This document shows, piece by piece, positions 2,337 through 32,869 of a DNA stretch of 64,000 bases. The DNA is taken from the IMG/VR virus record IMGVR_UViG_3300005613_000002, positions 62,001 through 126,000 of that record; one strand, written 5' to 3'. Within the stretch, counting starts at the first letter, position 1. Each line of letters begins with the position of its first letter. The notes beneath the pieces were generated by a model. The model did no database searches. It saw only the letters and a program-made list of their open reading frames with translations, and was not told the origin of the DNA. The translations under genes and the position numbers were made by a program.

Positions 2337-2360
2337 AATTATAACTATATATTTAAATAG

Positions 2361-7000: not shown

Positions 7001-7234
7001 TGTTCTATTAACAACCAATCTACCATAAATCGTATTTTCAAGATTATATGATTTAAATGGTGTTAAAAGACTAGTAATACTACTAATTGCACTTACTGTT
7101 TTATCAACAGCACCATCATCATATGTTGGATACTCAGTATATGGAGTATATAAATTTCTAGTTACTAATGTATCTCTTATTTGATTAGTAGTAGTTAATA
7201 GATTAGATGTTGTGATATCTGATTGTGTTGCCAT
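4058..7234 (-). CDS. Large baseplate/tail-tube initiator-like protein with an inserted OmpA-C-like peptidoglycan-binding domain
   Basis: Tube-initiator-like motifs (VGRGEPMYNYQNSER; PICILRVGD...IIESLNIDY...WD) flank IIGSAS..YNELLGQRRADA..SLG..QDR. Start moved to ATG 7234 because a late motif lies at 7254-7261. Confidence 0.6.
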   Translation of the reverse strand: MATQSDITTSNLLTTTNQIRDTLVTRNLYTPYTEYPTYDDGAVDKTVSAISSITSLLTPFKSYNLENTIYGRLVVNRTPLSEIGLVMLGRQFAMNAGSSVAQDYLPIMNVSNLFDGNKDTKLFTKRINYNITKKEDKTGFSNFIDSVTGFYPNKNYPFTKDADNNDFLNNTGTGQLKFLFTSINNNRFRPNNDAYNVVYYDKADEAETSIQGTKNILLSNNKKFFDFNNNRFYPYKSFIVQYLNNSEYSNDVANQNMFNSADYSNGDYAPNDDAIDWMGNPLKKDYTYTSVFGQNDWIGDETEFRGNLNNNENKIVWGRDGIDDITNNVGAQYRGDNYQGFTVDESKFETDFNVKTGLLEYTRNLVIASQGEIVDMTRKAFMKGDKIAGFNGSGLFKSNDSTYADSSDNTSVRGTRQHSAIDQYDKFTKTIRFNGNKVYGGNENSVIYDSVLPRIHPILDKEGNINNKDLMFSLENLAVRVISKDGVGIIDDEFGSPIPVCEVGPFNGRIMWFPPYALEINETTNAKFESTVMVGRGEPMYNYQNSERSAVLNFSLLIDYPPHVKNYKDSKTSHKDIAEFFAFGGDKLTNITPQTNQEAKIKELENKKELIIGDNKSIQPNLNKNSKTFTIYFPNDVPKVSDNLSSIIDTMYDNSYDIHPEIITTTDLTHYGLNKDIFYIGDLNTVNVSGKTYYEVSKPYSYSQYTSVFETDFFGNTVPLISELKRFFENEEDREYYKIEIIGSASKLYTSEYNELLGQRRADAAKNFIERKILALFGKTPDQMGVEITTESLGSTKASDDGATVSGIALKSAKQDRYSEIKIVRNDKSVDNISKTLTADEQKTIDDINNEIVGLENEKNKQKNNASDCLMNERTADESAILNGFSSINKNNFYPAFHSQTPEDFHKRLTFLQQCMRQGAALRYDVQVDDNNITRAKNSVFGRQPICILRVGDFFYTKVIIESLNIDYVDSPWDMNPEGFGMQPMMANVTLSMKVMGGQSLKGPIDALQNAVSFNYYANSNFSSEGMYKLPSDVANKQESYMKGILATEKEKLNKLIN

Positions 7235-7642
7235 TAATATCTTATTATTTTTAATAAATACTTGTAATATTAAATTATTAAACATATTTTTACACTGCCA
7301 AAATCTACCCAAACCTCAACGCACAATATAAACTTATTTATCCTAAAACATTGTTGGGTATTAACCCAAGTGAAAAATTGAATGATAATAACTTGATCTA
7401 ACCAATCCAAATCAAAAGATTTGGATTTTTCCCTTAAATTGAGTATAATAAGTTAATGATTAAAATAGCGAATTTTAATGAGCATAGTATTCCTATTATT
7501 CAAATTGTTATTAGATTTGTAAAATTTAATAATCAAGTATGTAATTTTGTTTATTAAATTCGTAGAATTGAATAAAAAGACTTTTTGTGTATAAAGTGGA
7601 CTGGCTTATTAGACAGTTTGCTTTATTAAACGGAAAGTTCGT

Positions 7643-7673
7643 CAAAGTTACAAGAATTATTTTTAATAAACAA
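7643..7673 (-). promoter_or_regulatory. Bacteroidota-type promoter firing into an ORF-free intergenic region
   Basis: Minus strand TTG-N20-TAACTTTG. Confidence 0.6.
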
Positions 7674-7703
7674 GAGATTTTTAATTAAATTCAAAAAATA
7701 AAA

Positions 7704-10181
7704 TTATGTACCTGTTCCATAACCAATTTTAGCATCAACTTGTCTTTGTATTGCTGTTACTGGACGATATATTTTTTGCATAAATTTTTCACCATCAATA
7801 TTTAATGTAATATCACTAACTACTGCTACATTACTATCAGCAAATTCAACTTTTAATGGTTTTTTCAAAATATTTGCTAAGTCAGCTAACATTCCACCAC
7901 CTTTTGTATTTACTTTTGATATTGATTCGACAGCATTTTGTATTGCGATATAATCTTCTTTATTTCCAGTTAATACTGTGCTAATATTTTTAAATGCATT
8001 ACCAACTCTTGAAATTGCATCAGCATTTTTTGATATTGTTTTCATTGTTGCAGCAAATGTTAATAATCCTAATGCACCAACTGTAAATCCCATCATTGAA
8101 GCAGCTAACATTCCAACTCCTGCTCCTACTTTTATCATTGATTCACCAGCACCATTACTTTTTTCAATTAAATTTCCTAAACCTTCAGCCATTTGACCAA
8201 TTCCCCATGCAGCAATTCCAATACCAGCACCAACACCTAAAGCAGCAGCACCAAAAGCTAACATTGCTGGTGCAGCAGCAGTACCTGCCGTAGCAAACGC
8301 AAACATTGCAGGTACTAAAATTGCAACCATAGTACCACCAAGAATACCAATAGTACCATTCATCATTTTTAGTTTATCTACATCAACATCTTTAATTGCT
8401 TTTGCTAATTCACTAATACCTGCTGATGCTACACCAATACCAGCACCCACTCCAACGGCAGCAGCACCAACACCTAATCCACCTTTCATCATACCTGCAC
8501 CTCTACCAGCAGCTAATTTTCCCCTACCAGCCATTTGTGAACCAGATAAAGCAGAACCTCGACTTCCAATTCCACCAGTCAATTTATTTGCAGCACCTGA
8601 TGTTAAATTTCCAAATCCTTTTAATACAGTTTTCCATGCTAAAGCACCAGCTAATAATATACCACCAGCAGTAGCAACACCACCCCAACCACTTCCAGCA
8701 AGAGTTGACATCCAATCAGCAATAGGTCTTACCCATTCTAATGTTTTATTAACACCTCTTAATAATGGTAATAATGCACCTTTTAATGCATTTATTGTAT
8801 TTTTGAATACTTCATCAAATGTTTGTGCTTCTTTTGCTCTTTGTTGTAATGTTGTTTGTTCTTTCTGAAAAGCATTTGCTTGTTCACTAGTTAATTTACT
8901 AATATCTGTCATATGACCAGCAAGCATAACTTGGAATTTACCAGTTTTAGAATCCATCGTGGCAGCACCTTTAAGTAATTCCTTTTCACGCTTAGTTAAT
9001 CCTCTACCAGCTAATTGATTATCCATTATAGATAAATCAAGTCTTCTTTGTGCAATTTCAAACATTTCTTCTTTAGCAATACCTAAAGAATTTGCAACAT
9101 TTGATAATCTATCAACATCAGCAGGACTTATAAATTTTTCGAAGGTTGTTTTACCATCAGGACTTATTATTTTCCTTAAAGTATAAACTCCTTTAGTCAT
9201 ATTTGATATTTGTTCTGTAACCTTTTCTGGTTCATTACGAACCATATATAACCAACGGAGTGGGTCCATTTTTGCAAAATTACCACCCATTACTTGTAAA
9301 TTAGCACCTAATTCAATTACTTTTTCTAATCCTCTTGTTGCTTCAGCTACATTAAGAGCAGTTTCCATACTAACTCTAGTTTTTTCAGCATCTATAGCCA
9401 TAGTACTGAATGCTTTAACACCGTTAATAAATGTAAATGTTGATAATTTTTTGAAGTTTTTATTAATATTTGAAAGAATTTTAGTTGTATTAAGACCCAT
9501 AAGTTCAGATGTTTCTACAACACCTTGAACAAAATTCATAGTTCTTCTAACATCAATTCCCATATATTCAAATTGTGCAGCTAATTTTGTTGCTTGTTCA
9601 ACACCTAAACCAGTACCTCTACCAATAGTAGTTATATCTATCAGAGTTTCAGCCACTAAAGCACGTGCTCTGCCAGTTTCATCAGCAAAACCTTGTTGCA
9701 TTGTTCGAATATCTTCTAATGAACCACCTAAACTTGAAACGATTCCAACCGATTGTTCGAATGATTGTCTCATTAAATCAGCTTTTGCTCCCGACATTCC
9801 TAAATTAAGGATTGTTGATTTAATAATTTTATCTGAAGCTAATAAATAATCTAAACCAAGTTTAAATTGTCCAACAGTGAATTTTAATATACCTAATAAT
9901 TGTTGTCTAGTTCTAACCTCTTTTGAAACTTCAGAATTAACATTTCGTTGTTCATTTACAATTTTAGTTAATTCTTCTTTTTCTTGAGCAGTTAATGATG
10001 ATGCTTGTTTTCTTGATTCTAATACTAGTCTTTCTTGTTCAGTTTGGACTCTTTTTTGATTTGCAATATATTCTTCTTGAATTTTTATTCTATCATTAAA
10101 ATCAATAGCAGTATTTAATTGATTATTATAATCAACCTGTAAATCCCTCAATTGTTTTAAAAATTCTAATTTATCTGCCAT
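7704..10181 (-). CDS. Tape measure protein
   Basis: 825 aa; helical/coiled N-terminus; A/G-rich hydrophobic C-terminal half; lies between chaperone-like and baseplate genes. Confidence 0.8.
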   Translation of the reverse strand: MADKLEFLKQLRDLQVDYNNQLNTAIDFNDRIKIQEEYIANQKRVQTEQERLVLESRKQASSLTAQEKEELTKIVNEQRNVNSEVSKEVRTRQQLLGILKFTVGQFKLGLDYLLASDKIIKSTILNLGMSGAKADLMRQSFEQSVGIVSSLGGSLEDIRTMQQGFADETGRARALVAETLIDITTIGRGTGLGVEQATKLAAQFEYMGIDVRRTMNFVQGVVETSELMGLNTTKILSNINKNFKKLSTFTFINGVKAFSTMAIDAEKTRVSMETALNVAEATRGLEKVIELGANLQVMGGNFAKMDPLRWLYMVRNEPEKVTEQISNMTKGVYTLRKIISPDGKTTFEKFISPADVDRLSNVANSLGIAKEEMFEIAQRRLDLSIMDNQLAGRGLTKREKELLKGAATMDSKTGKFQVMLAGHMTDISKLTSEQANAFQKEQTTLQQRAKEAQTFDEVFKNTINALKGALLPLLRGVNKTLEWVRPIADWMSTLAGSGWGGVATAGGILLAGALAWKTVLKGFGNLTSGAANKLTGGIGSRGSALSGSQMAGRGKLAAGRGAGMMKGGLGVGAAAVGVGAGIGVASAGISELAKAIKDVDVDKLKMMNGTIGILGGTMVAILVPAMFAFATAGTAAAPAMLAFGAAALGVGAGIGIAAWGIGQMAEGLGNLIEKSNGAGESMIKVGAGVGMLAASMMGFTVGALGLLTFAATMKTISKNADAISRVGNAFKNISTVLTGNKEDYIAIQNAVESISKVNTKGGGMLADLANILKKPLKVEFADSNVAVVSDITLNIDGEKFMQKIYRPVTAIQRQVDAKIGYGTGT

Positions 10182-10205: not shown

Positions 10206-10238
10206 AATAGTCCAAGTTTTTTAATGACTTGGACTATT
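10206..10238. repeat. Perfect 12-bp inverted repeat abutting the tape measure late promoter
   Basis: AATAGTCCAAGT-N9-ACTTGGACTATT; late motif at 10198-10205. Confidence 0.7.
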
Positions 10239-10400
10239 ACTATTTTTTAATCTTGCAGCTTCCTGCATTTTTTCGATTTCTTCATTTTCTTTTTGTAATA
10301 AAAACAAAAAGTGTCTTCTTCTGTAAATTGGCAGTCTTTCTACGTACTCTGCTTGAAACTTAGCGTGTTTGGTCAAAATATAAATTTCTTCATCGACCAT
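10221..10400 (-). CDS. T4 gp51-like hub/tail assembly protein (59 aa); probable -1 frameshift extension of the upstream gene
   Basis: Not in the track. MVDEEIYILTKHAKFQAEYVERLPIYRRRHFLFLLQKENEEIEKMQEAARLKNSNSPSH; this frame is open back to the T9 run at 10431-10439. Confidence 0.7.
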   Translation of the reverse strand: MVDEEIYILTKHAKFQAEYVERLPIYRRRHFLFLLQKENEEIEKMQEAARLKNSNSPSH

Positions 10401-10417
10401 TTTTTTGTAATCACCCG

Positions 10418-11317
10418 CTAGGTGCTTGGGAAAAAAAAATCTATGCCCACACTTAAATTCGTTTTAAATTTATAACCATCATTAGTCATAAATTCATATG
10501 CCATATCAACATCTGGTTTAACATCCATGATTTTTTTACGAATAGTGTACGCATCTAATGCTGGCATAGCATCAACAAATCTATCAATATATGATCTGTC
10601 ATCTTTTCCATTAATTGAAACAATACTTGCTTTTAGTTTTAACGTACTATATTGACTATAATCTTCACCATATGCTAATTTAATTTCTTCGGCTGATTTA
10701 TATATTTTTGAATCTTCACCATGACTAATTAATCTAATTATAACAGTTTTTTTACGCATTGGTATTTTTACTGAGAAATAACCTCTTTCATCAGGTTTTT
10801 CTTCAACTATTTTATATCTAAGTTTTAATAAATCTACTTTTGAATTAAATGGGATACCTGTTCTTGGGTCAACAACTTCTACAGAATAATCTGAACCATA
10901 ACTAGATGTACGTAAAAATAATAAAAGTGCATTTCTATCACCTTCTAATAAATCTTCAACTATAATTCCTTGAGATTTAATTTTTCTTTTTAATAACACA
11001 TCTAAAACAGTACCATTTTCGATTAATGATGGAGTTGTTAATAAATCTTCATCTTTAGATGTCATATATTCGATATTAACTTCAGAAACACCATTTGGGT
11101 AGTATAAACCATTTGATGGTAATTTAACTATTTCATATGATGTAATTAAATCAGGGTCAGTTTCTTTTGACATAGTTTTTTCATATTCATTAGCATTAAA
11201 GTTTGCTTTTGGAACAGAATCACCAACAACTGGGATATTATCGCCTGATTTATATTTATTTAGTGCATCAGCAATGCTTTCTTTTTTTGGTATATTATCA
11301 ATGTTTTCGTTTCCCAT
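10418..11317 (-). CDS. T4 gp26-like baseplate hub/tail assembly chaperone
   Basis: VKLPSNG, YMTSKDEDLL, GDRNALLLFLR..SYG motifs; C-terminal DFFFP. Confidence 0.75.
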   Translation of the reverse strand: MGNENIDNIPKKESIADALNKYKSGDNIPVVGDSVPKANFNANEYEKTMSKETDPDLITSYEIVKLPSNGLYYPNGVSEVNIEYMTSKDEDLLTTPSLIENGTVLDVLLKRKIKSQGIIVEDLLEGDRNALLLFLRTSSYGSDYSVEVVDPRTGIPFNSKVDLLKLRYKIVEEKPDERGYFSVKIPMRKKTVIIRLISHGEDSKIYKSAEEIKLAYGEDYSQYSTLKLKASIVSINGKDDRSYIDRFVDAMPALDAYTIRKKIMDVKPDVDMAYEFMTNDGYKFKTNLSVGIDFFFPST

Positions 11318-11430: not shown

Positions 11431-11709
11431 ATGAAAAATAATATATTAGTAATTTATGTTGGTGTAGCTGGTATTCGTGCTGAAGATATTCCTGAATATG
11501 TAAATAAGGTAGCAGCTAAAATTACACCAGTAACTTTTGAAGGTGAAATTATTTACATACCAATACAATCAAATGATACTAGAATAGAATGTGTAAATCC
11601 TAAATATATTACTGATATTGAATTGATTAATGAAAATAGAACAAAAATAAAAGAATTAAATGAAGAATTAAAATTTCAAATAAAACAATTAAAATCGAAT
11701 AAGAAATGA
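11431..11709 (+). CDS. Hypothetical protein
   Basis: 92-aa ORF overlapping the start of the next gene. Confidence 0.7.
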   Translation: MKNNILVIYVGVAGIRAEDIPEYVNKVAAKITPVTFEGEIIYIPIQSNDTRIECVNPKYITDIELINENRTKIKELNEELKFQIKQLKSNKK

Positions 11710-12443
11710 GTAAAAAAATAAAGGTTGGTATAGATATAAATGAAATTTTTAGAGCAAGATGGCTTCAATTTGATAGATTTTATGCACAGGAATTTGGTGA
11801 AGATGGTGTTCCTGATACACAACCATATGTGTATGATTTATTTAATAGTTATAAATTTGAAGACACAACTGAAACAATTAAGGAATTAAAAGAACCTGAA
11901 GATTTTCCTGAAAATATTAATCCAATTGATTATGAACTTAATGAAGAAGGTGAAGCACCAGCAGATGCTTTTTTATTTAAAAAACCTGAAGTTAATAAAT
12001 TAACTGCAAAAGAAGTTTATAATAGATTTATGTATGAAGATTTCCTTTTTGAACTTCATGCAAGTGCACCAATAATGTACAAGGGTATGGATTTACATGT
12101 TAATAATTTTTTAGAAAAATATAAAGACTCATGTGAATTTATTATTTATTCTGTTGAAAATAAATTCAGTATTCCACCAACATTATTCTTTTTAAGTAAA
12201 ATGTCATGTAGATTCAAAAATATTAAATTTATCGATAAATCTGTTGATGCTTTAAATGATGTTGATGTGTTAATTACTACTGACCCAGAAATATTATCAT
12301 TAGGTGTTCCTTGGGGTATGAAAATAATTAAAATGAGTAGACCATATAATAAAAAATTAAAATCAAATTCTATGGAAGCATTACAAATAGCTGATTTAAT
12401 TGATAATTTAGAATTTGAAAAAATAATTAAATACAAAAAATAA
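11706..12443 (+). CDS. HAD-superfamily 5'-nucleotidase-like protein (NT5C-like, degenerate)
   Basis: N-terminal VGIDINEI; DVLITTDP; KMSRPYN C-terminal motif. Confidence 0.55.
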   Translation: MSKKIKVGIDINEIFRARWLQFDRFYAQEFGEDGVPDTQPYVYDLFNSYKFEDTTETIKELKEPEDFPENINPIDYELNEEGEAPADAFLFKKPEVNKLTAKEVYNRFMYEDFLFELHASAPIMYKGMDLHVNNFLEKYKDSCEFIIYSVENKFSIPPTLFFLSKMSCRFKNIKFIDKSVDALNDVDVLITTDPEILSLGVPWGMKIIKMSRPYNKKLKSNSMEALQIADLIDNLEFEKIIKYKK

Positions 12444-12448
12444 TAAAA

Positions 12449-13627
12449 ATGAGTGAAGAATTAAATATAGCAACAAAACAAGCTGATTCTGAAAAAATAG
12501 AAAAAGTTAAATTATCTTTAGATAAAATAAAAAATAAAGAATCTAAATTTTTATTTTGTGTACCAGAATCACAAAGTCCTTCAGCAAGTGTTTATGAAAT
12601 TTATTTTCATGCAACAGTTGTAAAAAATATGGGATATAATGTAACTATTTTGGTTGAAAAAGGTGATTATGTTGCACCAAAATGGATTGAAAAAGAATTA
12701 ACACAGCATGAACATTTATCTTTAACAGACCCCAAATTAATGGTCGGTCCTGAAGACGTGATGATAATCCCTGAGATATATTCAAATGTAATGGAACAAA
12801 CTAAAAATTTACCATGCGTTAGAATTGGATTTTTACAATCAGTGGATTATATGACAAATAGTTTAATTCCCGGGACTGATTGGGCATCATTTGGAATTCA
12901 TGATATTATTACAACATCACAATCGCTTAAAGAACTATTTGAAACATTCTATGGGGAAACTAAATATAAAATTCAAACATATAATATTGGTATTCCTGAT
13001 TATTTTGAAAAATCAGATAAACCTCAAAAGCCAATAATTTCAATTATAGGTAGAAATCCAAATGAAATTTCAAAATTTGTTAAATTATTTTTTAGTAAAT
13101 ATCCACAATATAGTTGGGTTACATTTGACCCAATGTTAACTAAAAGTAAACCACCACAATCAATGCGTAGAGTTGACTTTGCAAAAAGATTGAAAGGAAA
13201 TTTTGCAGCAGTTTGGATTGATAGAATATCATCTTTTGGTACATTTCCATTAGAATGTATGAAATCTGGTGTAGTTCCAATTTGTTTTAAACCAGATATT
13301 ATCCCTGAATATTTAATTGAAAGAGATGAAAAAGGTGTTGCTAAAAAAATGGTTGAAGGTGCTGGTGTATGGACTGATAATTATTATGAATTACCAGTAC
13401 TAATGAATGATGTTTTAGTTAAGTTCCTAGATGATTCAATTTTACCAACACTATATGAATCAATGAATAATGTTGCTTCAAAATATACTCAAGAGGATTC
13501 AGAAAAACAATTAGTTGAAATATATCAAGGTTTTATTAATCAAAGAACTAGTTTGTTTGAACAGGCATTAACTACACCTGCTGAAGAAGTAAATGAAGTA
13601 GAAAAAAATAATAAAAAAGAAAAATAA
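12449..13627 (+). CDS. GT-B fold glycosyltransferase-like protein
   Basis: DVMIIPEIY; SSFGTFPLECMKSG matches the GT-B (E/S)xFGxxPLEAMxxG motif. Confidence 0.7.
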   Translation: MSEELNIATKQADSEKIEKVKLSLDKIKNKESKFLFCVPESQSPSASVYEIYFHATVVKNMGYNVTILVEKGDYVAPKWIEKELTQHEHLSLTDPKLMVGPEDVMIIPEIYSNVMEQTKNLPCVRIGFLQSVDYMTNSLIPGTDWASFGIHDIITTSQSLKELFETFYGETKYKIQTYNIGIPDYFEKSDKPQKPIISIIGRNPNEISKFVKLFFSKYPQYSWVTFDPMLTKSKPPQSMRRVDFAKRLKGNFAAVWIDRISSFGTFPLECMKSGVVPICFKPDIIPEYLIERDEKGVAKKMVEGAGVWTDNYYELPVLMNDVLVKFLDDSILPTLYESMNNVASKYTQEDSEKQLVEIYQGFINQRTSLFEQALTTPAEEVNEVEKNNKKEK

Positions 13628-13634
13628 AGTAACA

Positions 13635-14468
13635 ATGAATATATCAGTAATAATTCCAGTTCATAAATATGATGATAAAATTTCAACATATTTAAATAGT
13701 GTAATTGAATCAATAACAAAAAATGTAGGTGTAACTGAATTACCTCAAGTAATTATTGTTTATCCACCAGATATTGAAAAAGAAATTATAGGATTTAGAG
13801 ATAGTCAAGTCCGAAAATATGGTGATAAATTTTCTGAAGCTAAATATACTTTAGTGAAAAATGAAGATAAAACTGATTATCAATCACAGGTAAATTTAGG
13901 TGTTGAATATGTAAGCACTGATTATTTTTCAGTAATTGAATTTGATGATGAATTTAGTACCACTTATTTTAAAAATGTTGAACAGCATATAAACACATAT
14001 CAAGATGTTGATATTTTCTTATCAATGATAATTGAGGTTAATGATAAAAACGAAGGTATGAAATTAACTAATGAAACCGTATGGGCGCAACAATTTGTTG
14101 GTGAAAATGGTGAAATGGGTTATTTGAATGCAAAATCATTACAACAATATACAGATTTTAAATTATCTGGTGCTGTAATAAAAAAATCAGAATTTGAAAA
14201 TATTGGTAAATATAAATCAAATATAAAACTATCATTTATGTATGAGTTGTTGTTAAGGGCATTAAATAATGCGTGTAAAATATATACGATACCTAAAATC
14301 GGATATAAACATTTAGCAACAAGACCAGATAGTTTATTTGGTGAATATTCTAAATCAATGTCAATGAATGAAAGAAAATTTTGGTTTGATACAGCTAAGA
14401 ATGAGGCTAATTTTATTAATGATAGGGTTATTGATACATCACGTATAACTAAACAAATTGTTACATAA
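13635..14468 (+). CDS. GT2-like glycosyltransferase
   Basis: ISVIIPVH, QVNLGV, YFSVIEFDD motifs. Confidence 0.7.
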   Translation: MNISVIIPVHKYDDKISTYLNSVIESITKNVGVTELPQVIIVYPPDIEKEIIGFRDSQVRKYGDKFSEAKYTLVKNEDKTDYQSQVNLGVEYVSTDYFSVIEFDDEFSTTYFKNVEQHINTYQDVDIFLSMIIEVNDKNEGMKLTNETVWAQQFVGENGEMGYLNAKSLQQYTDFKLSGAVIKKSEFENIGKYKSNIKLSFMYELLLRALNNACKIYTIPKIGYKHLATRPDSLFGEYSKSMSMNERKFWFDTAKNEANFINDRVIDTSRITKQIVT

Positions 14469-14496
14469 AAATAAGACTATTAATTTTATGTAGATA

Positions 14497-15249
14497 ATGA
14501 AAGAAATTAAAAAAAGTACACCATATTTTGCTGAAAGGGAAGAACAAGCTGTAGCTGATTATATTAATTCAAACTCATTTGAGGAAAAGAATAAAATATA
14601 TAATGAGATACTGATTGAACCCTTTCGCAAAATGATTCAATCCATATTAAGAAGATATCCAATACATATTGGAAACTATGATATGGCAGAAGTAGAATCA
14701 AATGCATTAGCACATTTGATAGACCATATGGTTAAATTTAATCCAGATAAAATCACAAAATCAGGAAAAAAAACCAAGGCTTTTAGCTATTGTCAAACTA
14801 TAATTAGAAACTATTATAAAGACCATAGTAAAAAAAGTTATACTGAAAAGAAAATTAATCTATCTTTTGATGATTATGTTGATGAAATAAATAACAACAA
14901 TGAATTTGCATATGAAATTGAATTAGAATCACAACATCAACTTGAAAAATTGATTAATGAGGTAATATGTGAGATGGAGAAAATGATTGATGGTGAAACA
15001 CCGATGAAGAAAAATGAAATTATTGTTGGTGATGCAATTATTAACATCTTAAAATATTGGCATTTATTATTTTTGGAAGATAGTCCAGATGGGAAATATA
15101 ATAAAAAAGTAACTAATAAATTTCAAAAAAATAAAATATTATTTTATCTTAAAGAACAAACAGGATTAACAACTAAAGAAATTCGTATTGCTATTAAACC
15201 ATTTAAGGAAATTTATTTCTTAAAAAAAGTTAGTTATTTAGAGGAATAA
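14497..15249 (+). CDS. Phage late-transcription sigma factor (T4 gp55-like)
   Basis: PYF..EEQAV.DY N-terminus and KFNP...KAFSYCQTIIRNYY region-2-like motif resembling gp55 proteins. Confidence 0.65.
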   Translation: MKEIKKSTPYFAEREEQAVADYINSNSFEEKNKIYNEILIEPFRKMIQSILRRYPIHIGNYDMAEVESNALAHLIDHMVKFNPDKITKSGKKTKAFSYCQTIIRNYYKDHSKKSYTEKKINLSFDDYVDEINNNNEFAYEIELESQHQLEKLINEVICEMEKMIDGETPMKKNEIIVGDAIINILKYWHLLFLEDSPDGKYNKKVTNKFQKNKILFYLKEQTGLTTKEIRIAIKPFKEIYFLKKVSYLEE

Positions 15250-15309
15250 ATAAACATACAAATAATAAATTCCATCTAACTTGTATTTATATGTACTAAA
15301 ACTATTATA

Positions 15310-15690
15310 ATGGCAAGACCAATAAGAAAAAGAATAAAATTTGATGAAGATAGTGTTGAAAACTTACTTCAAGAAATCTATAATGATAGTCATAACATTA
15401 AAGCAAAAATAACTAGGTTATTTAATAAATGGGAAACTAAAGTTAAAGAAAATGGCGAAATTGCTGCTATTGGTGACCAGATTGTTAAATTAATAGCAGC
15501 AGAAGCAAAAAACCAAGACCAAAAAATCATGTTATTAAAATACTTAAAAGAAGTAGTGTTTGATAAGACTGGTGGAAAAGGTGAAGTAGTGAAGACTGAT
15601 GGTGAACAAACAATCTCTGCTGATAGAAGAAATGAATTATTAAATATAGTTCAAGAAGAAATCGAGAAAAAAGAGAAAGTATCTAAATAA
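15310..15690 (+). CDS. Hypothetical late protein
   Basis: Helical 126-aa ORF; late motif GTATTTATA at 15283. Confidence 0.75.
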   Translation: MARPIRKRIKFDEDSVENLLQEIYNDSHNIKAKITRLFNKWETKVKENGEIAAIGDQIVKLIAAEAKNQDQKIMLLKYLKEVVFDKTGGKGEVVKTDGEQTISADRRNELLNIVQEEIEKKEKVSK

Positions 15691-17021: not shown

Positions 17022-17022
17022 T

Positions 17023-17430: not shown

Positions 17431-17636
17431 TGAAAGATTTAAAAAAATATACACCAACAGAATTATTAAAAATGATTAACGAAACTAAAGATAATCATAA
17501 TAATTTAAAAGAAGAAATAGTAAGTGATACATACAAAATGGATGAACTTGAAAAAAATATTAATTCAAAACTTGATATTTTAGATAAATATGAAAAAGAT
17601 TATATTACATTATTAGAAGAAATAAATAGTAGATAA
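17430..17636 (+). CDS. Small coiled-coil hypothetical protein
   Basis: 68 aa; TAATG coupling on both sides. Confidence 0.7.
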   Translation: MKDLKKYTPTELLKMINETKDNHNNLKEEIVSDTYKMDELEKNINSKLDILDKYEKDYITLLEEINSR

Positions 17637-18526: not shown

Positions 18527-18547
18527 AATTTGAGTATTTTTGTTTTA

Positions 18548-19339
18548 ATGGATATTCAATTAGAAATACCAACCGAGTTATTTACGTCATTTAACGAGGT
18601 TAAATATTATGATGAACCACATAAATATTATGTAGGTAATAAAGAATTGGTTTCAGTTACAACACTTCTACATAAATATCAAGAAGAATTTGATGAAGAC
18701 TATTGGTCTGAATATAAAAGTAACCAATTTGGGATAAAAAAGCACCACGTTTTAAGAGCATGGGACTTTATTAATAAAAAAGGTACAATTAAAGGTTCAG
18801 CAATTCATGATTATACTGAAAATTTATTCATTAATAAAAAATTTGAATACCCAAGACAAAAAATATTTAATGAATTTGGTTTTGACCCTGTTACTATTGA
18901 ATATGAAATAACAAAGAAACATGTTGATAAATTTTATTCTGATTCGTATGGTAAATTAATTCCAATTAAAACTGAATTAGTTGTTTATGATAAAATTGCA
19001 CTTATTGGTGGAATGGTTGATATGTTATTTTATAATGTAAGAGCTGGTGAGTTTCAAATTTTTGACTGGAAAACAAATAAGAATTTTACAAATTCAACTA
19101 ATAGAAGATTAAAAAATAATTTATATGTTTTAAATGATTCTGATTTAACAATATATTCATTACAATTAGGATTATATAAATATATAATTGAAAAATATAC
19201 ATCAATTAAATTAGGAAAATCATATTTAGTATGGTTTTCACATAATAATCCAACATATAAAATAATTGAAACTAAAGATTTAACATATTTTGTTGATATT
19301 GTAATACAAAATAGAATTAATGAAATTAAAGTAGTTTAA
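18548..19339 (+). CDS. PD-(D/E)XK exonuclease (RecB/Cas4-like)
   Basis: SVTT, GSAIH, E..V, GMVD, IFDWKTNK and YSLQLGLY motifs; host-type promoter TTG-N19-TATTTTTG at 18513-18542. Confidence 0.8.
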   Translation: MDIQLEIPTELFTSFNEVKYYDEPHKYYVGNKELVSVTTLLHKYQEEFDEDYWSEYKSNQFGIKKHHVLRAWDFINKKGTIKGSAIHDYTENLFINKKFEYPRQKIFNEFGFDPVTIEYEITKKHVDKFYSDSYGKLIPIKTELVVYDKIALIGGMVDMLFYNVRAGEFQIFDWKTNKNFTNSTNRRLKNNLYVLNDSDLTIYSLQLGLYKYIIEKYTSIKLGKSYLVWFSHNNPTYKIIETKDLTYFVDIVIQNRINEIKVV

Positions 19340-20012
19340 ATTTTTCACGTTTACGACTTAAAGAAATATTAATTGAATCATTATATAAATATTTATGAAA
19401 TGTATTTAAATCTTTTTTATTTGTTATTCTTATTTGTGATGAAAACCCACCTCTACTAGTTATTATTCTTTCTTTATATTTATTAATTCCAATTTCATTA
19501 AATAATTTAATAATAAAATACCAATCTTGTTCTTTATGTCCAGTAAATGCTATTGAATGATGTCCTTTAGGAATTATTGTAACAGAACCATCACCATCAA
19601 AAAAACCTCTAAACCATAATTGCTTTTCAATATTATTTAATTTTGATAATATCTTATCTGGTGATTTTATTTTATTTCTATAATTATTTTCAATTAAAAA
19701 CTCCCCTAATTCTCTATTTGAAGTCCAATTTACTTCAAGAATATTATTTTTTTTAGTAAATGACCCTTGATTTCTTGTCTCATAAATTCCCCAATCACCA
19801 GTGTTAAGAAAAATTTTTCTAAAAAAAATATTATCTTCTTTTTTTGTTGAATGTTTAATTTGTGGTGTTTTTGCTTTATTATTAGCAAAAATGACACTAC
19901 CATCTGCCCATAATAACCCAAGTAAATATGCGTGTGATAATGTTTCCACATTAATAAAGTCAATTGCTGATACTTTTTTTATTTTCATTTGAAATTTGTT
20001 TACGATTCCCAT
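19326..20012 (-). mobile_element. Free-standing double-motif LAGLIDADG homing endonuclease
   Basis: AYLLGLLWADGS and WFRGFFDGDGS motifs; C-terminal LSRKREKF. Confidence 0.85.
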
Positions 20013-20072: not shown

Positions 20073-20564
20073 TTAGAGATTTAAAATACATCTCCAAGGT
20101 TGTAATTCAAGAGTTATAGTTGATAATTCATCATTACTATAGTCATTATCACCAAAATCAATTGAAGTTATCATACATTGCTCTAAGAAAAACTTAGCAA
20201 CTTCAATACCTGTTGGGTCTAATTCTTTTAATAAAATATTTTTCTTGTAACCTGCTGCATAACCCATACGTCCTGTAAGTGATTCTGCATGTAAACGAAC
20301 CCACTCCATGAGTTGTTGTGATGTTGAAGGACCGATTGGGTCTAAGAACGTCACACTCATTGATTCCCAAGTATATCTACCAGCTACGTAATTTTGTTCA
20401 TTCATAAATGGTATTGGGACAGAGTTTATTTTCATTGTAGGTCTTTTAAATTTTTGAACCTTCCAAACTTCAATTCCTAATTCATCAGCAAATTCAGCGA
20501 AAAATCGGTTTATTCTTTTTGGTTCATATTCGAATGGGATACCCCTTATCATTTCTCCTGCCAT
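20073..20564 (-). CDS. gp19: Tail tube protein
   Basis: EPKRINRF, YVAGRYTW, GYAAGYKK and LDPTG motifs; directly follows the sheath gene. Confidence 0.9.
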   Translation of the reverse strand: MAGEMIRGIPFEYEPKRINRFFAEFADELGIEVWKVQKFKRPTMKINSVPIPFMNEQNYVAGRYTWESMSVTFLDPIGPSTSQQLMEWVRLHAESLTGRMGYAAGYKKNILLKELDPTGIEVAKFFLEQCMITSIDFGDNDYSNDELSTITLELQPWRCILNL

Positions 20565-20706: not shown

Positions 20707-23511
20707 TTATGCACCAACATCTGAGAAGGATGCTCCAGATGGAGTTATTGTGAATGTAATTCCAATAAATTCAACTGCTCTTGTTGGTTTTAAGAATATT
20801 TCACCATATAATTCATTTCTGTCTTTAGATTCAGTAGTATTATTACTGTCATCCATTTTTATCCTAAATTCTTGCAAACCTCTTTCTCTTTTTATTGTAT
20901 CCAAAATTGGTGTTGCTTTAGATAAGAATTGGTCAATAGTTGTTTGGTCATTTTGTTCAAATACTAATCTAATTGCAATATTAGCAATAAGAACTTTAAT
21001 TTGAAGTAATAATCTACGAACATTAATTCTATCAAGTGCACTTTCTTTTACTTGAAGTGTTTTTTGTCCGAATATTGCAGTACCAACATCAGCATAATCA
21101 GCCATTGGATTGATTCTACCTTCATATAAAGTATCACGTGCTTCTTGTGAAAGTTTATATTTAGATTTCCTTGCGTTTGTAACACCACGGTTTAAACCAG
21201 CAGGTGAGAACCAAGGGAATTTAGTATTATCAGTAAATGCCATTGCTCTAACTACTTCACCTGTTGGTGGAAGATAAACATTAACATTATTCTCGGTATC
21301 TCTCATTTGAATCCAAGGAAAATAAGTACATGAATAGCTTGAATCAACATCAGCAGTATCGAGTAAATCAACAATATCTTCGGAAGCAATAACATCAGCT
21401 TTTCCACCATCACCAATAGTTAATGAAACATCAACATCTGGAGAATCAATAATATATAAACTATCAGTTCTTTGCGTTTCAATCATTTCAATAATGTCTT
21501 GAACCAAAATATTTTCATCAGACCAATTAATACCCGGAGTTGCAAACAAATTAATTGTTATTTCTTCTGGGTTAGACATAGTATTTACAGCAGTTTCCCA
21601 TGCTTGGAAATCATTTGTTGGGCTTCCGTTTGGTGTTACACCATCATAAAGACCATTTAAACGATATAAATCACCAGTTGAACGTTCAGTTCTGTTTTCA
21701 TCCCAACCATCAAAACCTTTTGAAGGAACTAAAGTAAATTTTCTAGTATTAATATCATAATATTCAGCAGTTGCATCACTTATTACATCTTCAACAGTTT
21801 GGAAATTACCATCACCACTATCAAAAGAATAACCATTTGATGTAACACCAGATGCATCAACATCCATGTGGAAACCTTTAGATTTTACGTGTGTTCCAGT
21901 ACTTTCTTGTCCATTAAAATTGAATAAATTTTGGTTAATTCCAGTTCCAATTACACCTGTCGCATCATAACCGTTTTCAGAAACACCTAAATATACTTTT
22001 TTTACTCTTTCATCATCATTATATTTAGTTTTATAGAATATTTTTGGTGCAGTACCATCAACACTTCCACCAGTATTAGAAATTTCATAATTATTCAACA
22101 TATATCCTTCAAAACCAGCAGGGAAGTCAGTAATACTTAAATCATCAGCAACTTCAATCATAATATATTCACTCATTAAATCGTATTCACCATCAGTTGT
22201 ACCTATTCGTTGTGCAATATAATTAGTTTCACCTTTAATTAAATTACATCTAGTGAAGGATTCTAAAACTGTAACATCATCATCAGTATCATAAAAATCA
22301 CGGATATATATATCAAATTCTAATGTTGATGGATTAATATTTGCAATACTAATTTTAATTTCCTTATTAGCATCATCACCGTCTGATATACTAACAAATT
22401 TAAATAATCTACTTACTGCACTACCTTTAACCTGAGAAACAACCCAAGGTGTTTCAGGAGTTTTAAATTGTGTTTTATAATTAGTGAATGCATCTGTATC
22501 ACATTCGATTAAAGTACTTGAAATACCAAATCCATAAGATGAAAGAGTACCAATTCCATAACTAGTTAATCCTGAAGTACCAGAATAATTAAGTATAGAA
22601 TCACCATCAGCATCCAATTTTTTTATTAAATCAGGATAAACTGCTTCAACCCATATTTTAGTTGTTTTATCTTTAGGTTCACTACCAATTACATTAGGTA
22701 GGTAACTACTTGAATCAGGATTTAATGAAACTGTATGTGTTTCTTTAGTTGTTCCACTTGTTGCAGTTATTTTGAAAGTCTCAAACATGTCCCCAATTCC
22801 TAATATTGTTGAATTTCCTGAGATTGCAACAGATGTTGTATCGAATTTAGTTGTCGGTGATGCGTTAAGATTATCAATAACATAACCTCTACTTCTAACA
22901 ATAGCTAATACCATATTACTATAATCAGTATTTTCTGTTGCTGTAAATGTTGTTGCTGTTACAGATACTACACCAGCACCAGTACTTGCAGAGTATGATG
23001 TGCATGTAAATTGATATGATGTGCCAGTAAAATCAGTATCATTAATTTTTTCAAATCCAGTAAATGTTGTTCCAGTATCGCCAGTTTGATTAATACCGAC
23101 ACCTAAATATTCGTTATCAGTAAATGATGCAGTTGATACAGAACTTGTACCACTACTTATTGTTGTTGGGTCAACACCAGCATCTAAGTTAATAGTCCAT
23201 GCTTTACCAGCATCATAACCACTAAGTCCCAATATTCTAGTTACCCACAATTGATTTGATTCTTCAAGATATGAATTAGCTACATATGGTAATTGATATT
23301 GAAGATTTCCATTTGAAAATCTATTTACACTTTGACCACCAAATCTATTACTGAAATCTGTTTTGTCTTGTATGTAAACTGGTTCAAAGGCAGGTCCTTT
23401 AAGGGTTTCTCCAACAAGACCTAATGTTGTTATTCCTACATTACGTGTTACAAATGTTAAGTCACGCTCTTTAAATTTTACACCCGGAGAGGTGAATACA
23501 AATTCTGCCAT
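20707..23511 (-). CDS. gp18: Contractile tail sheath protein
   Basis: SPGV..ERD, GETLKGP, PWFSPAGLNRG, FGQKTLQ, DRINVRRLL and KPTRAVEFI motifs. Confidence 0.95.
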   Translation of the reverse strand: MAEFVFTSPGVKFKERDLTFVTRNVGITTLGLVGETLKGPAFEPVYIQDKTDFSNRFGGQSVNRFSNGNLQYQLPYVANSYLEESNQLWVTRILGLSGYDAGKAWTINLDAGVDPTTISSGTSSVSTASFTDNEYLGVGINQTGDTGTTFTGFEKINDTDFTGTSYQFTCTSYSASTGAGVVSVTATTFTATENTDYSNMVLAIVRSRGYVIDNLNASPTTKFDTTSVAISGNSTILGIGDMFETFKITATSGTTKETHTVSLNPDSSSYLPNVIGSEPKDKTTKIWVEAVYPDLIKKLDADGDSILNYSGTSGLTSYGIGTLSSYGFGISSTLIECDTDAFTNYKTQFKTPETPWVVSQVKGSAVSRLFKFVSISDGDDANKEIKISIANINPSTLEFDIYIRDFYDTDDDVTVLESFTRCNLIKGETNYIAQRIGTTDGEYDLMSEYIMIEVADDLSITDFPAGFEGYMLNNYEISNTGGSVDGTAPKIFYKTKYNDDERVKKVYLGVSENGYDATGVIGTGINQNLFNFNGQESTGTHVKSKGFHMDVDASGVTSNGYSFDSGDGNFQTVEDVISDATAEYYDINTRKFTLVPSKGFDGWDENRTERSTGDLYRLNGLYDGVTPNGSPTNDFQAWETAVNTMSNPEEITINLFATPGINWSDENILVQDIIEMIETQRTDSLYIIDSPDVDVSLTIGDGGKADVIASEDIVDLLDTADVDSSYSCTYFPWIQMRDTENNVNVYLPPTGEVVRAMAFTDNTKFPWFSPAGLNRGVTNARKSKYKLSQEARDTLYEGRINPMADYADVGTAIFGQKTLQVKESALDRINVRRLLLQIKVLIANIAIRLVFEQNDQTTIDQFLSKATPILDTIKRERGLQEFRIKMDDSNNTTESKDRNELYGEIFLKPTRAVEFIGITFTITPSGASFSDVGA

Positions 23512-32317: not shown

Positions 32318-32869
32318 TTAATTCCCTTTTGTTTCATATAAAAATGGAATAACATCCTCTTTTACTGGAACACCAGTGATTCGTTTCCAATATGGTTTGA
32401 ATCCACCAATTGTTTTCTTTGTTTCATCAGTAATATTATTAGCACTTTCAACTTCATAATATCTATTTTTTTCACCACTCATATTATATTCAACAATATC
32501 ACCACGATCAATTTCAATTTTTTTTTCTTCTAATTCTTTAAGATAAACACCGAAACTAATAATACCAGTATCATCACGACTAATCCCACCTTGAGCAGCA
32601 CCATAATATTCTTGTTGCCCATTATCAATATTAACCATTACGCTTATGCGCACTGGTTTCATAAACTTTTTATCTTTAGCTTTTGCTTGACCATATAGTG
32701 AATGAGATTTAGTATCAATTATGTTTATTTTATGAATAATAACTTCCTGTGCATTATCTGTTTGTAAGAAGTTTCGACCATACATAACATCTAAATCAAA
32801 CGAATTATCAGTCATAAATAATCCAAATCTATCATCTTCCAAATTTATTACTTGTTTTTTCTTTCTCAT
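32318..32869 (-). CDS. Head completion/neck protein (gp14-like)
   Basis: SLYGQA..KKF..PV, GDIV...YYEV pattern; in an operon with the gp13-like gene. Confidence 0.6.
   Translation of the reverse strand: MRKKKQVINLEDDRFGLFMTDNSFDLDVMYGRNFLQTDNAQEVIIHKINIIDTKSHSLYGQAKAKDKKFMKPVRISVMVNIDNGQQEYYGAAQGGISRDDTGIISFGVYLKELEEKKIEIDRGDIVEYNMSGEKNRYYEVESANNITDETKKTIGGFKPYWKRITGVPVKEDVIPFLYETKGN

What the first reader, a model, noticed from the sequence alone, without database searches (positions are those of the whole stretch)
10221..10450. Probable programmed -1 frameshift fusing gp26-like and gp51-like ORFs just upstream of the tape measure gene
Seen: the coding strand reads GAT TTT TTT TTC CCA AGC ACC TAG, a T9 run giving X XXY YYZ heptamers. 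The -1 frame (TTT CCC AAG CAC CTA GCG GGT GAT TAC AAA AAA ATG GTC...) is open into a 59-aa gp51-like ORF. A GC-rich mini-hairpin (CACCT-AGC-GGGTG) lies just 3' of the slip site. Established: lambda G/GT-type tail assembly chaperones use a -1 frameshift at exactly this genomic position. Inference: gp26/gp51-like proteins here are the G/GT equivalent of T4-like phages.
Basis: partly seen in the sequence, partly recalled or inferred. Interest (0 to 1): 0.72.

Follow-up and report, generated by a model that had tools for sequence, protein, structure and literature searches.

The report
Frameshifted tail chaperone, gp26/gp51 family
A 322-kb phage very probably makes a short and a long form of its tail-assembly chaperone from one gene by slipping back one base on a run of T's, and the protein belongs to the family of phage T4 gp26 and gp51, which suggests that T4, the textbook exception to this frameshift, does the same job with two genes.

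Summary
On the minus strand a 299-aa ORF (11317..10418) ends GAT TTT TTT TTC CCA AGC ACC TAG. The -1 frame is open from the T9 run (10439..10431) to 10221, which would give a 365-aa long form.

In 58 distinct related phage contigs (55-71% protein identity) several features are kept:
- The run is always T8 or T9, with seven T and the following CCC invariant.
- The 0-frame stop lies 10 nt after the run in 54 of 58.
- The -1 ORF is always open and encodes a highly conserved 66-75-aa helical domain.
- Codon periodicity in the -1 frame starts upstream of the downstream ATG.

The ORF is a PF12322 protein (T4 gp26/gp51 family). Its C-terminal domain has a tail-assembly-chaperone fold (YqbN Z 6.5, HK97 chaperone Z 5.3), and it sits directly upstream of a tape-measure-like gene.

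The extension is related to the C-terminal tail of T4 gp51 (hhalign E 6.6e-5). Distant relatives reach the same extension by +1 shifts, as a separate gene, or through a second paralogue fused in frame.

Its mini-hairpin is not conserved. Ribosomal slippage cannot yet be separated from transcriptional slippage.

The parts
10418..11317 (-). Short-form chaperone ORF (299 aa), T4 gp26/gp51 family. Residues about 60-296 are the conserved body, residues about 175-275 have a tail-assembly-chaperone-like fold, and the ORF ends ...VGIDFFFPST*.
   Evidence: ORF list and translation. PF12322 E 2.6e-7, 31 bits against a cut-off of 24.5, and phrog_150 'baseplate hub'. 860 homologues of about 295-320 aa. 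AlphaFold model pLDDT 77. VIA-align top hits YqbN 3klu Z 6.5, 3fgx Z 5.9, HK97 chaperone 2ob9 Z 5.3, 5ir0 Z 4.9, and the next hit Z 3.6.
10428..10441 (-). Slip site GAT-T9-CCC core. The T9 run is 10439..10431. The in-phase heptamers are T_TTT_TTT (10439-10433) and T_TTT_TTC (10436-10430). The CCC (10430-10428) is the first new-frame codon after the Phe codons.
   Evidence: Sequence. In 58 relatives, 7 T and the CCC are invariant and the run is T9 in 48 and T8 in 10. Three variants (T8C4, T8C5) keep both frames by compensating run lengths.
10418..10420 (-). 0-frame stop TAG, three codons after the Phe codons. It is embedded in the conserved Leu-Ala codons (CTA GCG) of the -1 frame.
   Evidence: The stop (TAG 54, TAA 4) lies 10 nt after the run in 54 of 58 relatives.
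10221..10439 (-). -1 frame coding region of the long form (72 codons plus TAA). The extension domain FFFP-KH-LAGDYKKMVDEEIYILTKHAKFQAEYVERLPIYRRRHFLFLLQKENEE... is predicted to form three helices. The long form is 293 + 72 = 365 aa.
   Evidence: Translation. The frame is open and conserved in 59 of 59 sequences, 66-75 aa, mean column identity 69%. Entropy by codon position between the 0-frame stop and the ATG is 0.23, 0.17 and 0.95 bits. AlphaFold pLDDT 88.6 with helices 5-25, 30-35 and 38-67. Related to the T4 gp51 C-tail by hhalign: score 32.9, E 6.6e-5, controls at most 14.2.
10221..10400 (-). The 59-aa ORF as a gene caller would list it (ATG 10400). It is most probably not an independent gene but the distal part of the extension.
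   Evidence: No Pfam or PHROG hit. The ATG is replaced in L033, L082, L091 and L087. Small ORFs of 51-79 aa are what public gene calls hold for this domain.
10412..10424 (-). It is present in the window but is not a conserved element.
   Evidence: 76% of cells are paired against 75% in shuffles (105 of 500 shuffles reach it), and the outer pairs are broken in 11-13 of 32 sequences. RNAalifold finds no conserved structure 3' of the site, -0.09 kcal/mol. The window fold has z -0.66.
10206..10238 (-). 13-bp hairpin overlapping the stop codon of the extension, followed by GTATTTATA. It is a terminator- or attenuator-like element between the chaperone and tape-measure genes.
   Evidence: A hairpin at the same place with different, compensating stem sequences, followed by TTTTGTATTTATA, is seen by eye in most of the 59 related loci.
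7704..10181 (-). Probable tape measure protein (825 aa).
   Evidence: Position directly after the chaperone genes, as in annotated relatives. The N-terminus is coiled-coil-like and there are Gly/Ala-rich hydrophobic segments. Weak similarity to a Flavobacterium phage tape measure, 22% over 440 aa, E 0.05. The nearest named ESM-Atlas clusters are tape measure proteins, PF10145 in 71 of 100 and PF20155 in 27 of 100, score 0.94. No Pfam or PHROG hit.
20073..20564 (-). Tail tube protein (163 aa), the expected partner of the extension. It is context, not part of the recoding site.
   Evidence: phrog_4542 E 7.7e-24. PF06841 weak hit, E 1.4e-3.
20707..23511 (-). Tail sheath (934 aa), context.
   Evidence: phrog_23 E 1.2e-60.

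Best explanation
The gene at 11317..10418 (minus strand) encodes the tail-assembly (tape-measure) chaperone of a 322-kb contractile-tailed phage.

Most ribosomes read it in frame and stop at TAG 10420-10418, which gives a 299-aa short form. A minority slip back one base while decoding the Phe codons of the T run (T_TTT_TTT or T_TTT_TTC, 10439-10430). They then read CCC AAG CAC CTA GCG... in the -1 frame and finish at TAA 10223-10221. This gives a 365-aa long form that carries an extra three-helix domain of about 69 residues.

By analogy with lambda G/GT and P2 E/E+E', the shared part holds the tape measure protein (the 825-aa product of the next gene). That part includes a domain with the fold of known tail assembly chaperones. 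The extension would recruit the tail tube protein, and neither form should stay in the virion.

Shown: the anatomy, its conservation, the coding signature of the -1 frame, the family (PF12322, T4 gp26/gp51), and the fold likeness.

Inferred: that the shift is made by the ribosome, that it is a minority event, and what each part binds.
For: Anatomy and frames.

Conservation in 58 distinct relatives:
- T8 or T9 is always present, with 7 T plus CCC invariant.
- The 0-frame stop is 10 nt after the run in 54 of 58.
- The -1 ORF is open in all.
- Three variants change the T-run and C-run lengths together, which preserves both frames.

This invariance holds against 82% TTT, 6% CCC and 64% third-position identity elsewhere in these genes.

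The -1 frame shows codon periodicity in the six codons between the 0-frame stop and the ATG: 0.23, 0.17 and 0.95 bits. The ATG is lost in L033, L082, L091 and L087.

The long architecture exists as a plain in-frame protein, P0126. It lies next to a short paralogue, between the tube gene and a long ORF in the tape-measure position (859 aa, not itself tested). Its junction has no homopolymer.

Family and fold: PF12322. In a search of 48,161 PDB chains the top hits are YqbN Z 6.5, 3fgx Z 5.9, HK97 tail assembly chaperone Z 5.3 and 5ir0 Z 4.9. All align to residues about 175-275, and the next hit is Z 3.6.

Synteny (sheath, tube, gp26-like, small alternative-frame ORF, tape measure) in Microcystis, Flavobacterium, Listeria and Bacillus phages.

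Evidence for the ribosome:
- Every relative keeps an in-phase X_XXY_YYZ heptamer.
- 10 of 58 have only T8.
- The first T of T9 follows ordinary Asp codon usage (88% GAT here against 77% elsewhere).
- Distant lineages shift at Phe codons without any homopolymer (TTC TTT CGT, TTT CTT TGG, TTT CTA).
Against: - No protein or RNA data exist. Only two DNA metagenome runs hold 5-7% of the sampled words, so they carry relatives only.
- No conserved stimulatory RNA structure or Shine-Dalgarno-like element was found. This would fit a low-efficiency site but also fits transcriptional slippage.
- The run is always at least 8 T, longer than the 7 needed for ribosomal slippage.
- The extension can exist as a free-standing gene in some lineages (L112, L119), so an independently made 59-aa product cannot be excluded.
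- The complex prediction for extension plus tube gave no answer.
- The tape-measure identity of the next gene rests on position, composition and weak similarity.
- In this genome the tube gene is not adjacent. About 8 kb of opposite-strand genes and an HNH endonuclease lie between.
Confidence: 0.6

Rival explanations
1. Transcriptional slippage. RNA polymerase stutters on the A9 template run and adds one U to a fraction of transcripts. Standard translation of those mRNAs then gives the same 365-aa long form. It could act alone or together with ribosomal slippage.
For: The window has T9 and 48 of 58 relatives have T9. None has fewer than 8 T. No conserved RNA stimulator lies downstream. T9 runs are otherwise depleted in the window, as expected if such runs are error-prone. 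Established knowledge, not tested here: runs of about 9 A or T support productive slippage in Thermus dnaX, Shigella mxiE and IS elements, reviewed in PMC5009743.
Against: 10 of 58 relatives have only T8. The first T of the run behaves as a neutral Asp third position. Distant relatives reach the same extension from sites with no homopolymer. An in-phase heptamer is kept in all, including the T8C4 and T8C5 variants, although coding constraints would keep the phase anyway.
Confidence: 0.25
2. No fusion. The 59-aa ORF is an ordinary small gene translated from its own ATG (10400) with an A-rich leader. The T run is only the codons of a conserved Phe-Phe-Phe motif.
For: The ATG is kept in 54 of 58 relatives. 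In two distant lineages the extension domain is a separate gene with its own ATG and an extra N-terminal segment (L112, L119). Public gene calls list it as small ORFs.
Against: - The -1 frame is under coding constraint upstream of the ATG, up to the slip site: L-A-G-E/D-Y-K-K with third-position wobble.
- L082 and L091 have no ATG, GTG or TTG at or next to the position of that ATG.
- The two Phe codons are TTT in 58 of 58 against 82% usage elsewhere.
- In the +1 clade the alternative ORF opens only 20 nt before the stop and has no start codon for 24-32 codons.
- In-frame fusions exist in nature: P0126 and T4 gp51.
Confidence: 0.07
3. Artefact or decay. A homopolymer length error in the assembly, or a recent frameshift mutation, has split one gene.
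For: Homopolymers are error-prone in sequencing.
Against: The same split, with the 0-frame stop at the same place, occurs in 58 independent assemblies from many samples and in hundreds of homologues of about 300 aa. The 0-frame tail P-x-x-stop is itself maintained.
Confidence: 0.01

Closest known systems
Phage lambda G / GT tail assembly chaperones (-1 frameshift at G GGA AAG; Levin 1993, Xu 2004, 2013, 2014, as summarised in PMC5009743)
   Same: The gene lies directly upstream of the tape measure gene. A slippery heptamer sits a few codons before the stop of the upstream ORF. The short and long products share an N-terminal part. The frame relation is conserved in relatives. No strong RNA stimulator is present.
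   Different: The protein family differs (PF12322, usually annotated 'baseplate hub'), and a body of about 115 residues precedes the chaperone-fold domain. The slip sequence is a T run. The tube gene is not adjacent in this genome. Partners and ratio are untested.
Phage P2 E / E+E' (contractile-tailed phage; -1 shift on a T run, TTTTTTG; Christie et al. 2002, recalled from memory, and mentioned for efficiency in PMC5009743)
   Same: A myovirus with a -1 shift on a run of T within Phe codons, upstream of the tape measure gene.
   Different: No sequence relation was tested here. P2 E is a small protein, whereas the present short form is 299 aa.
Phage T4 gp26 (208 aa) and gp51 (249 aa), 'hub assembly chaperones' (PMC3004832)
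   Same: Same Pfam family: gp26 E 8.8e-64, gp51 E 3.9e-52, window protein E 2.6e-7. gp26 stops at the same point as the window's short form..EFFELL* against ..DFFFPST*. The extra C-terminal tail of gp51 aligns with the extension, hhalign E 6.6e-5 and colinear after the FF position.
   Different: T4 has two separate, divergently transcribed genes and no slippery run (GAG TTC TTT GAG TTA CTA TAA). T4 gene 26 is followed by gene 25, not by the tape measure gene 29. T4 also makes an internal-start product, 26'.
Solved chaperone folds: HK97 tail assembly chaperone (2ob9), B. subtilis YqbN (3klu; an XkdN-like prophage chaperone, from my own knowledge; the XkdN-like term is used in PMC11948020), lactococcal phage p2 ORF12 (3d8l)
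   Same: Residues about 175-275 of the model superpose on them: Z 6.5, 5.3 and 2.8. The first two are among the top four of 48,161 chains.
   Different: Z values are below 8 and sequence identity is 11-12%. This is fold likeness only. No Pfam chaperone family matched.
+1 frameshift sites of the RF2 (CUU UGA) or Listeria phage PSA type (PSA reference listed in PMC9024508)
   Same: Distant relatives of this gene reach the same extension in the +1 frame at YTT TGG or TTT C contexts.
   Different: The window itself uses -1. The +1 events are inferred from ORF geometry only.

Membership tests
G/GT-type tail assembly chaperone pair made by programmed frameshift | The gene pair lies between the tail tube gene and the tape measure gene | tested here: met
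   It lies directly upstream of the 825-aa tape-measure-like gene. The tube (phrog_4542) and sheath genes are on the same strand 9.6 kb upstream, separated by an HNH endonuclease and an opposite-strand block. In relatives the order sheath, tube, gp26-like, small ORF, tape measure is contiguous.
G/GT-type tail assembly chaperone pair made by programmed frameshift | [quoted passage not shown] | tested here: met
   T_TTT_TTT and T_TTT_TTC lie 3-5 codons before the TAG. The -1 frame is open for 72 codons.
G/GT-type tail assembly chaperone pair made by programmed frameshift | The slip site and frame relation are conserved among homologues despite sequence divergence | tested here: met
   58 of 58 distinct junctions keep them, and -1 frame periodicity begins upstream of the ATG.
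G/GT-type tail assembly chaperone pair made by programmed frameshift | Two proteins with a common N-terminus are made in a set ratio | not testable with these tools
   No proteomic or RNA data are available. The sequencing runs found hold only relatives, as DNA.
G/GT-type tail assembly chaperone pair made by programmed frameshift | The common part binds the tape measure, the extension binds the tube protein, and both are absent from virions | not testable with these tools
   The complex prediction for extension plus tube gave 'no answer'.
G/GT-type tail assembly chaperone pair made by programmed frameshift | Chaperone fold of the common part | tested here: inconclusive
   Top four of 48,161 chains: YqbN Z 6.5, 3fgx Z 5.9, HK97 chaperone Z 5.3, 5ir0 Z 4.9, with the next hit at Z 3.6. 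All are below Z 8, and the Foldseek E-values are 0.15-0.66.
PF12322 T4_baseplate (T4 gp26 / gp51) | Match to the family model above the curated cut-off | tested here: met
   31 bits against 24.5, residues 61-255. The same family is precomputed on nearly all listed homologues. BFVD fold hits to 'baseplate hub assembly protein, T4-like' reach E 1e-15 and below.
PF12322 T4_baseplate (T4 gp26 / gp51) | The short form ends at the gp26 C-terminus, and the extension corresponds to the extra tail of gp51 | tested here: met
   The FF motif aligns with the gp26 end. hhalign of the extension profile against 91 gp51 homologues gives score 32.9, E 6.6e-5, probability 64%, at gp51 columns 213-252. The reversed control scores 12.8 and 20 shuffles score at most 14.2. 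hmmsearch E 0.013. This is moderate, not strong, support.
Transcriptional slippage site | Homopolymer of about 9 or more A or T | tested here: inconclusive
   The window has T9, as do 48 of 58 relatives. The other 10 have T8.
Transcriptional slippage site | Length-heterogeneous transcripts | not testable with these tools
   No RNA run holds the sequence.
-1 frameshift sites with a 3' RNA stimulator or a 5' Shine-Dalgarno-like stimulator (dnaX / IS type) | A conserved hairpin or pseudoknot a few nt downstream, or an SD-like element upstream | tested here: not met
   RNAalifold gives -0.09 kcal/mol. The mini-hairpin is no better than shuffles. Upstream, only the GG of a Gly codon is conserved (alignment). 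No Rfam family matches.

The most novel reading that the evidence does not exclude
PF12322, the T4 gp26/gp51 family annotated as 'baseplate hub', may be the tape-measure chaperone family of T4-like and many other contractile-tailed phages. Its two-product logic (a short form, and a long form with a helical extension) would be ancestral and realised in interchangeable ways:
- a -1 slip on a T run (this phage clade, and Stenotrophomonas jumbo phage RAS14);
- a +1 shift at the same conserved Phe-Phe position (Microcystis, Flavobacterium, Bacillus, Listeria and Streptococcus phages and several metagenomic clades);
- the extension as a separate gene;
- two paralogous genes.

On this reading T4 uses the last solution, with gp26 as the 'G' and gp51 as the 'GT'. 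That would explain why T4 is the noted exception to the conserved tail frameshift, and why gp51 acts catalytically and is absent from virions.
Probability: 0.5. Interest if true: 0.75.

Novelty: new member of a known kind. Interest (0 to 1): 0.62.

Why it matters
The conserved G/GT frameshift of long-tailed phages is a textbook case of recoding, and T4 is cited as the exception (PMC5009743). [quoted passage not shown]

This locus shows a gp26/gp51-family gene in the chaperone position using exactly that frameshift logic. It gives a concrete, testable model for T4: gp26 as the short chaperone, and gp51 as the long chaperone with a tube-recruiting tail.

For annotation, hundreds of 'baseplate hub subunit' genes and the orphan 50-80-aa ORFs after them in myovirus and jumbo-phage genomes would be re-read as one recoded chaperone gene.

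The switches between -1, +1, split and duplicated solutions within one family would also be a useful natural series for studying how recoding sites evolve.

Tried and rejected
- Nucleotide search against 50,697 phage records found no match. tblastn with the extension found none either.
- BLASTP of the extension against whole T4 gp51 or gp26 gave only insignificant hits, E 0.35 and 8. The low-diversity extension alignment against single gp51 by hhalign gave nothing at the tail. The relation appeared only with a diverse extension profile against a gp51 family profile.
Rfam held nothing.
- The complex prediction for extension plus tube gave no answer, and I do not use it as evidence either way.
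- Public reads: only two DNA metagenome runs with 5-7% of the words and no RNA.
- Scans for relatives of the in-frame fusion P0126 and its short neighbour found nothing. That two-paralogue locus therefore rests on one contig.
- My recollection that cyanophage 'gp51' ORFs are small was not confirmed. The +1 clade extension hit only Microcystis and Flavobacterium phages.
- Six paper searches returned no paper describing a frameshift in gp26-family genes. Subscription papers such as the 2016 T4 baseplate structures were not readable.
Full report
**What is there**

The genes of this region lie on the minus strand. An ORF of 299 codons runs from ATG 11317 to TAG 10420-10418 and ends GAT TTT TTT TTC CCA AGC ACC TAG.
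- The T9 run is 10439..10431.
- In the phase of the ORF it offers two canonical X_XXY_YYZ heptamers, T_TTT_TTT and T_TTT_TTC.
- The -1 frame reads FFFPKHLAGDYKKMVDEE... and stays open to TAA 10223-10221.
- The 59-aa ORF of the ORF list (10400..10221) is the ATG-started part of this frame.
- A shift on the run would give a 365-aa protein (293 + 72 residues) beside the 299-aa one.

The next gene on the strand starts 39 nt later and encodes 825 aa.

**Is it more than chance?**

The run alone is not. T9 is expected 24 times in a shuffled window of this composition and is seen 7 times, so such runs are avoided. An open -1 frame of 72 or more codons at the end of a long ORF is found in 3 of 57 ORFs here, with a median of 3 codons.

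The weight comes from relatives.
- The protein has 860 homologues, nearly all 295-320 aa, many on contigs of 320-360 kb.
- The window belongs to a complete 321,624-bp virus record with terminal repeats.
- I fetched 92 related loci and obtained 58 distinct junctions at 55-71% protein identity.

All 58 junctions have T9 (48) or T8 (10). Seven T and the following CCC never vary. The 0-frame stop lies 10 nt after the run in 54. The -1 frame is open in all and encodes a 66-75-aa sequence that is highly conserved, with mean column identity 69%.

For comparison, elsewhere in these genes Phe is TTT in only 82% of codons, Pro is CCC in 6%, and third positions are 64% identical to the window. Three sequences have T8C4 or T8C5 instead of T9C3. 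These are paired length changes that keep both frames.

**The downstream ORF is read from the slip site, not from its ATG**

- In the six -1 frame codons between the 0-frame stop and the ATG (A-G-E/D-Y-K-K), column entropy is 0.23, 0.17 and 0.95 bits for codon positions 1, 2 and 3. This is a coding signature upstream of the ATG.
- The conserved Leu of this frame is encoded by YTA overlapping the TAG or TAA stop.
- The ATG is replaced in four relatives. Two of them (L082, L091) have no alternative start codon at or next to that position.
- A search of 1.84 billion representative proteins with the 70-aa extension found nine small ORFs and one 289-aa protein, P0126. In P0126 the extension follows a gp26-like domain in frame.
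- The P0126 junction DNA has no homopolymer, so this is not a run-length error.
- Immediately upstream in that contig lies a second, 265-aa gp26-like paralogue. It ends at the usual ..LFWP.. position. The gene order there is sheath, tube, short paralogue, long paralogue, then a 349-aa ORF and an 859-aa ORF, neither tested here.
- That locus is known from a single contig.

**What the proteins are**

- The 299-aa protein matches PF12322 (T4_baseplate) above the curated cut-off, and PHROG 150 'baseplate hub'.
- An AlphaFold model (pLDDT 77) finds many 'baseplate hub (assembly) protein' models of myoviruses in BFVD.
- Against the PDB, Foldseek gives no significant hit. Its best meaningful one is the HK97 tail assembly chaperone.
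- A full VIA-align pass over 48,161 chains ranks B. subtilis YqbN (Z 6.5), 3fgx (Z 5.9), the HK97 chaperone (Z 5.3) and a Vibrio PICI protein (Z 4.9) first. All align to residues about 175-275, and the next chain is at Z 3.6. Lactococcal phage p2 ORF12 appears lower, at Z 2.8.
- YqbN is, to my knowledge, the XkdN-type chaperone of a defective prophage. The term is used in PMC11948020.
- These Z values are modest, so I treat the chaperone fold as likely, not proven.
- The extension is predicted with pLDDT 88.6 to form three helices.
- The 825-aa protein has no Pfam or PHROG hit. It does have the composition of a tape measure, weak similarity to one, and tape-measure clusters as its nearest named neighbours in the ESM Atlas.
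- Tube and sheath genes lie 9.6 kb upstream on the same strand, separated by an HNH endonuclease gene and a block of opposite-strand genes.

**The wider family**

In cultured phages with about 25-33% identity the order is sheath, tube, PF12322 gene, small unannotated or 'hypothetical' ORF, tape measure. These are Microcystis Mel-JY01, Flavobacterium immuto, Listeria LIS04 and Bacillus HSE3; for Streptococcus GXN1 only sheath and the PF12322 gene are annotated, and Stenotrophomonas RAS14 has no named genes around it.
- All 0-frame products end a few residues after a conserved F-F/L-W/F-P motif.
- A homologous extension (L-x-x-D/E-Y ... E-I ... G-x-F ... M-P-x-x-x-R-R ...) follows in another frame.
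- The frame is -1 in RAS14 (T7 run) but +1 in the others, at TTT TTT TGG, TTT CTT TGG, TTT CTA and TTC TTT CGT CCC.
- In a metagenomic +1 clade the alternative ORF opens only 20 nt before the 0-frame stop (GCT TCT TTT GGC CTG ACG AAT GA). It has no ATG, GTG or TTG for 24-32 codons in most of the clade's distinct sequences, which excludes independent initiation there.
- In two lineages the extension is a separate gene with its own ATG.

**T4**

- T4 gp26 (208 aa) and gp51 (249 aa) both match PF12322 over its whole length, E 8.8e-64 and 3.9e-52, and are paralogues, BLASTP E 2e-6.
- gp26 ends ..EFFELL*, aligned with the window's ..DFFFPST*. It has no slippery run and is followed by gene 25.
- gp51 continues for about 46 residues beyond this point.
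- A profile of 34 diverse extensions finds that tail as its best non-self hit among 526 ORFs, E 0.013.
- Profile-profile comparison with 91 gp51 homologues aligns extension columns 26-66 with gp51 213-252. The score is 32.9, E 6.6e-5, probability 64%. The reversed control scores 12.8 and 20 column shuffles score at most 14.2.
- The match is colinear with the position of the FF motif. Support is moderate.
- The literature held here calls gp26 and gp51 'hub assembly chaperones', with gp51 essential, absent from the particle and of unknown function (PMC3004832). It states that G-T frameshifting is conserved in long-tailed phages 'except T4' (PMC5009743).
- Six searches returned no paper linking this family to a frameshift. 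Subscription papers could not be read.

**Mechanism and rivals**

I commit to a low-level -1 ribosomal slip on the Phe codons as the main route to the long form (confidence 0.6 for the whole statement). That some recoding event fuses the two frames I hold at about 0.85-0.9.

Transcriptional slippage on the T9 run is a serious rival (0.25).
- For it: the run is never under 8, and I found no conserved stimulatory structure.
- Against it as the selected mechanism: T8 in 10 relatives, the neutral-looking first T, and homopolymer-free shift sites in distant relatives.

Independent initiation without fusion (0.07) and artefact (0.01) are disfavoured by the evidence above.

Function is inferred from lambda G/GT: the common part on the tape measure, the extension on the tube. 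The one computational test gave no answer.

**Verdict**

The kind of system is known, so the window's site is a new member of a known kind. Its family membership, the family-wide switching of recoding direction, and the proposed reading of T4 gp26/gp51 as a G/GT pair encoded by two genes raise its interest.

Noticed in passing
window 10206-10238 (minus strand), and the same position in loci L022-L101: A 13-bp hairpin overlaps the stop codon of the extension ORF and is followed by GTATTTATA, about 40 nt before the tape-measure ATG. By eye, most of the 59 related loci show a hairpin there with different stem sequences that compensate each other, always followed by TTTTGTATTTATA. It looks like a conserved terminator or attenuator, perhaps with a promoter motif, between the chaperone and tape-measure genes. 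Its 5' arm encodes the conserved C-terminal ..RPR of the extension.
   Followed up: partly
window 32518-32526: This is the only other T9/A9 run inside a long ORF. It reads A9 on the coding strand of the minus-strand ORF 32869..32318 (183 aa). T9 runs are otherwise depleted in the window (7 hits against 24 expected).
   Followed up: no
window 11431-20012: The sheath-tube module and the chaperone-tape-measure module are contiguous in relatives but are split here. An HNH endonuclease gene (20012..19326) and about 8 kb of opposite-strand genes lie between them. The block includes an exonuclease-like gene, a glycosyltransferase-like gene and a baseplate-like gene.
   Followed up: partly
window 607-3673: Four consecutive glycosyltransferase family 2 genes lie on the minus strand, downstream of baseplate-like genes.
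   Followed up: no
window 4058-7312: A 1084-aa ORF after the tape-measure-like gene has a sub-threshold OmpA-like (peptidoglycan-binding) match at residues 750-824. It may be a hub or cell-puncturing protein. The 391-nt stretch 7313-7703 between it and the tape-measure gene holds only a 46-aa ORF.
   Followed up: no
L016 (T4) 5803-6090: The annotated internal-start product 26' of T4 (95 aa) covers roughly the part of gp26 that corresponds to the chaperone-fold domain of the window protein. T4 may therefore make three products of this family: gp26, gp26' and gp51.
   Followed up: no
gp51 homologues P0131-P0222: All carry a precomputed second Pfam family, PF28602, besides PF12322. That model is not in the local Pfam copy, so I could not test whether it covers the C-terminal tail and would hit the extension.
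   Followed up: no
L124 4001-4870 (P0126), junction near residue 217: At the junction of the in-frame long paralogue, the -1 frame reads ..NIWFRFEKR followed by two stops. This resembles the usual short-form ending of Firmicute-phage relatives (..EFFRPKFR*). It may be a relic of an earlier shifted arrangement.
   Followed up: no
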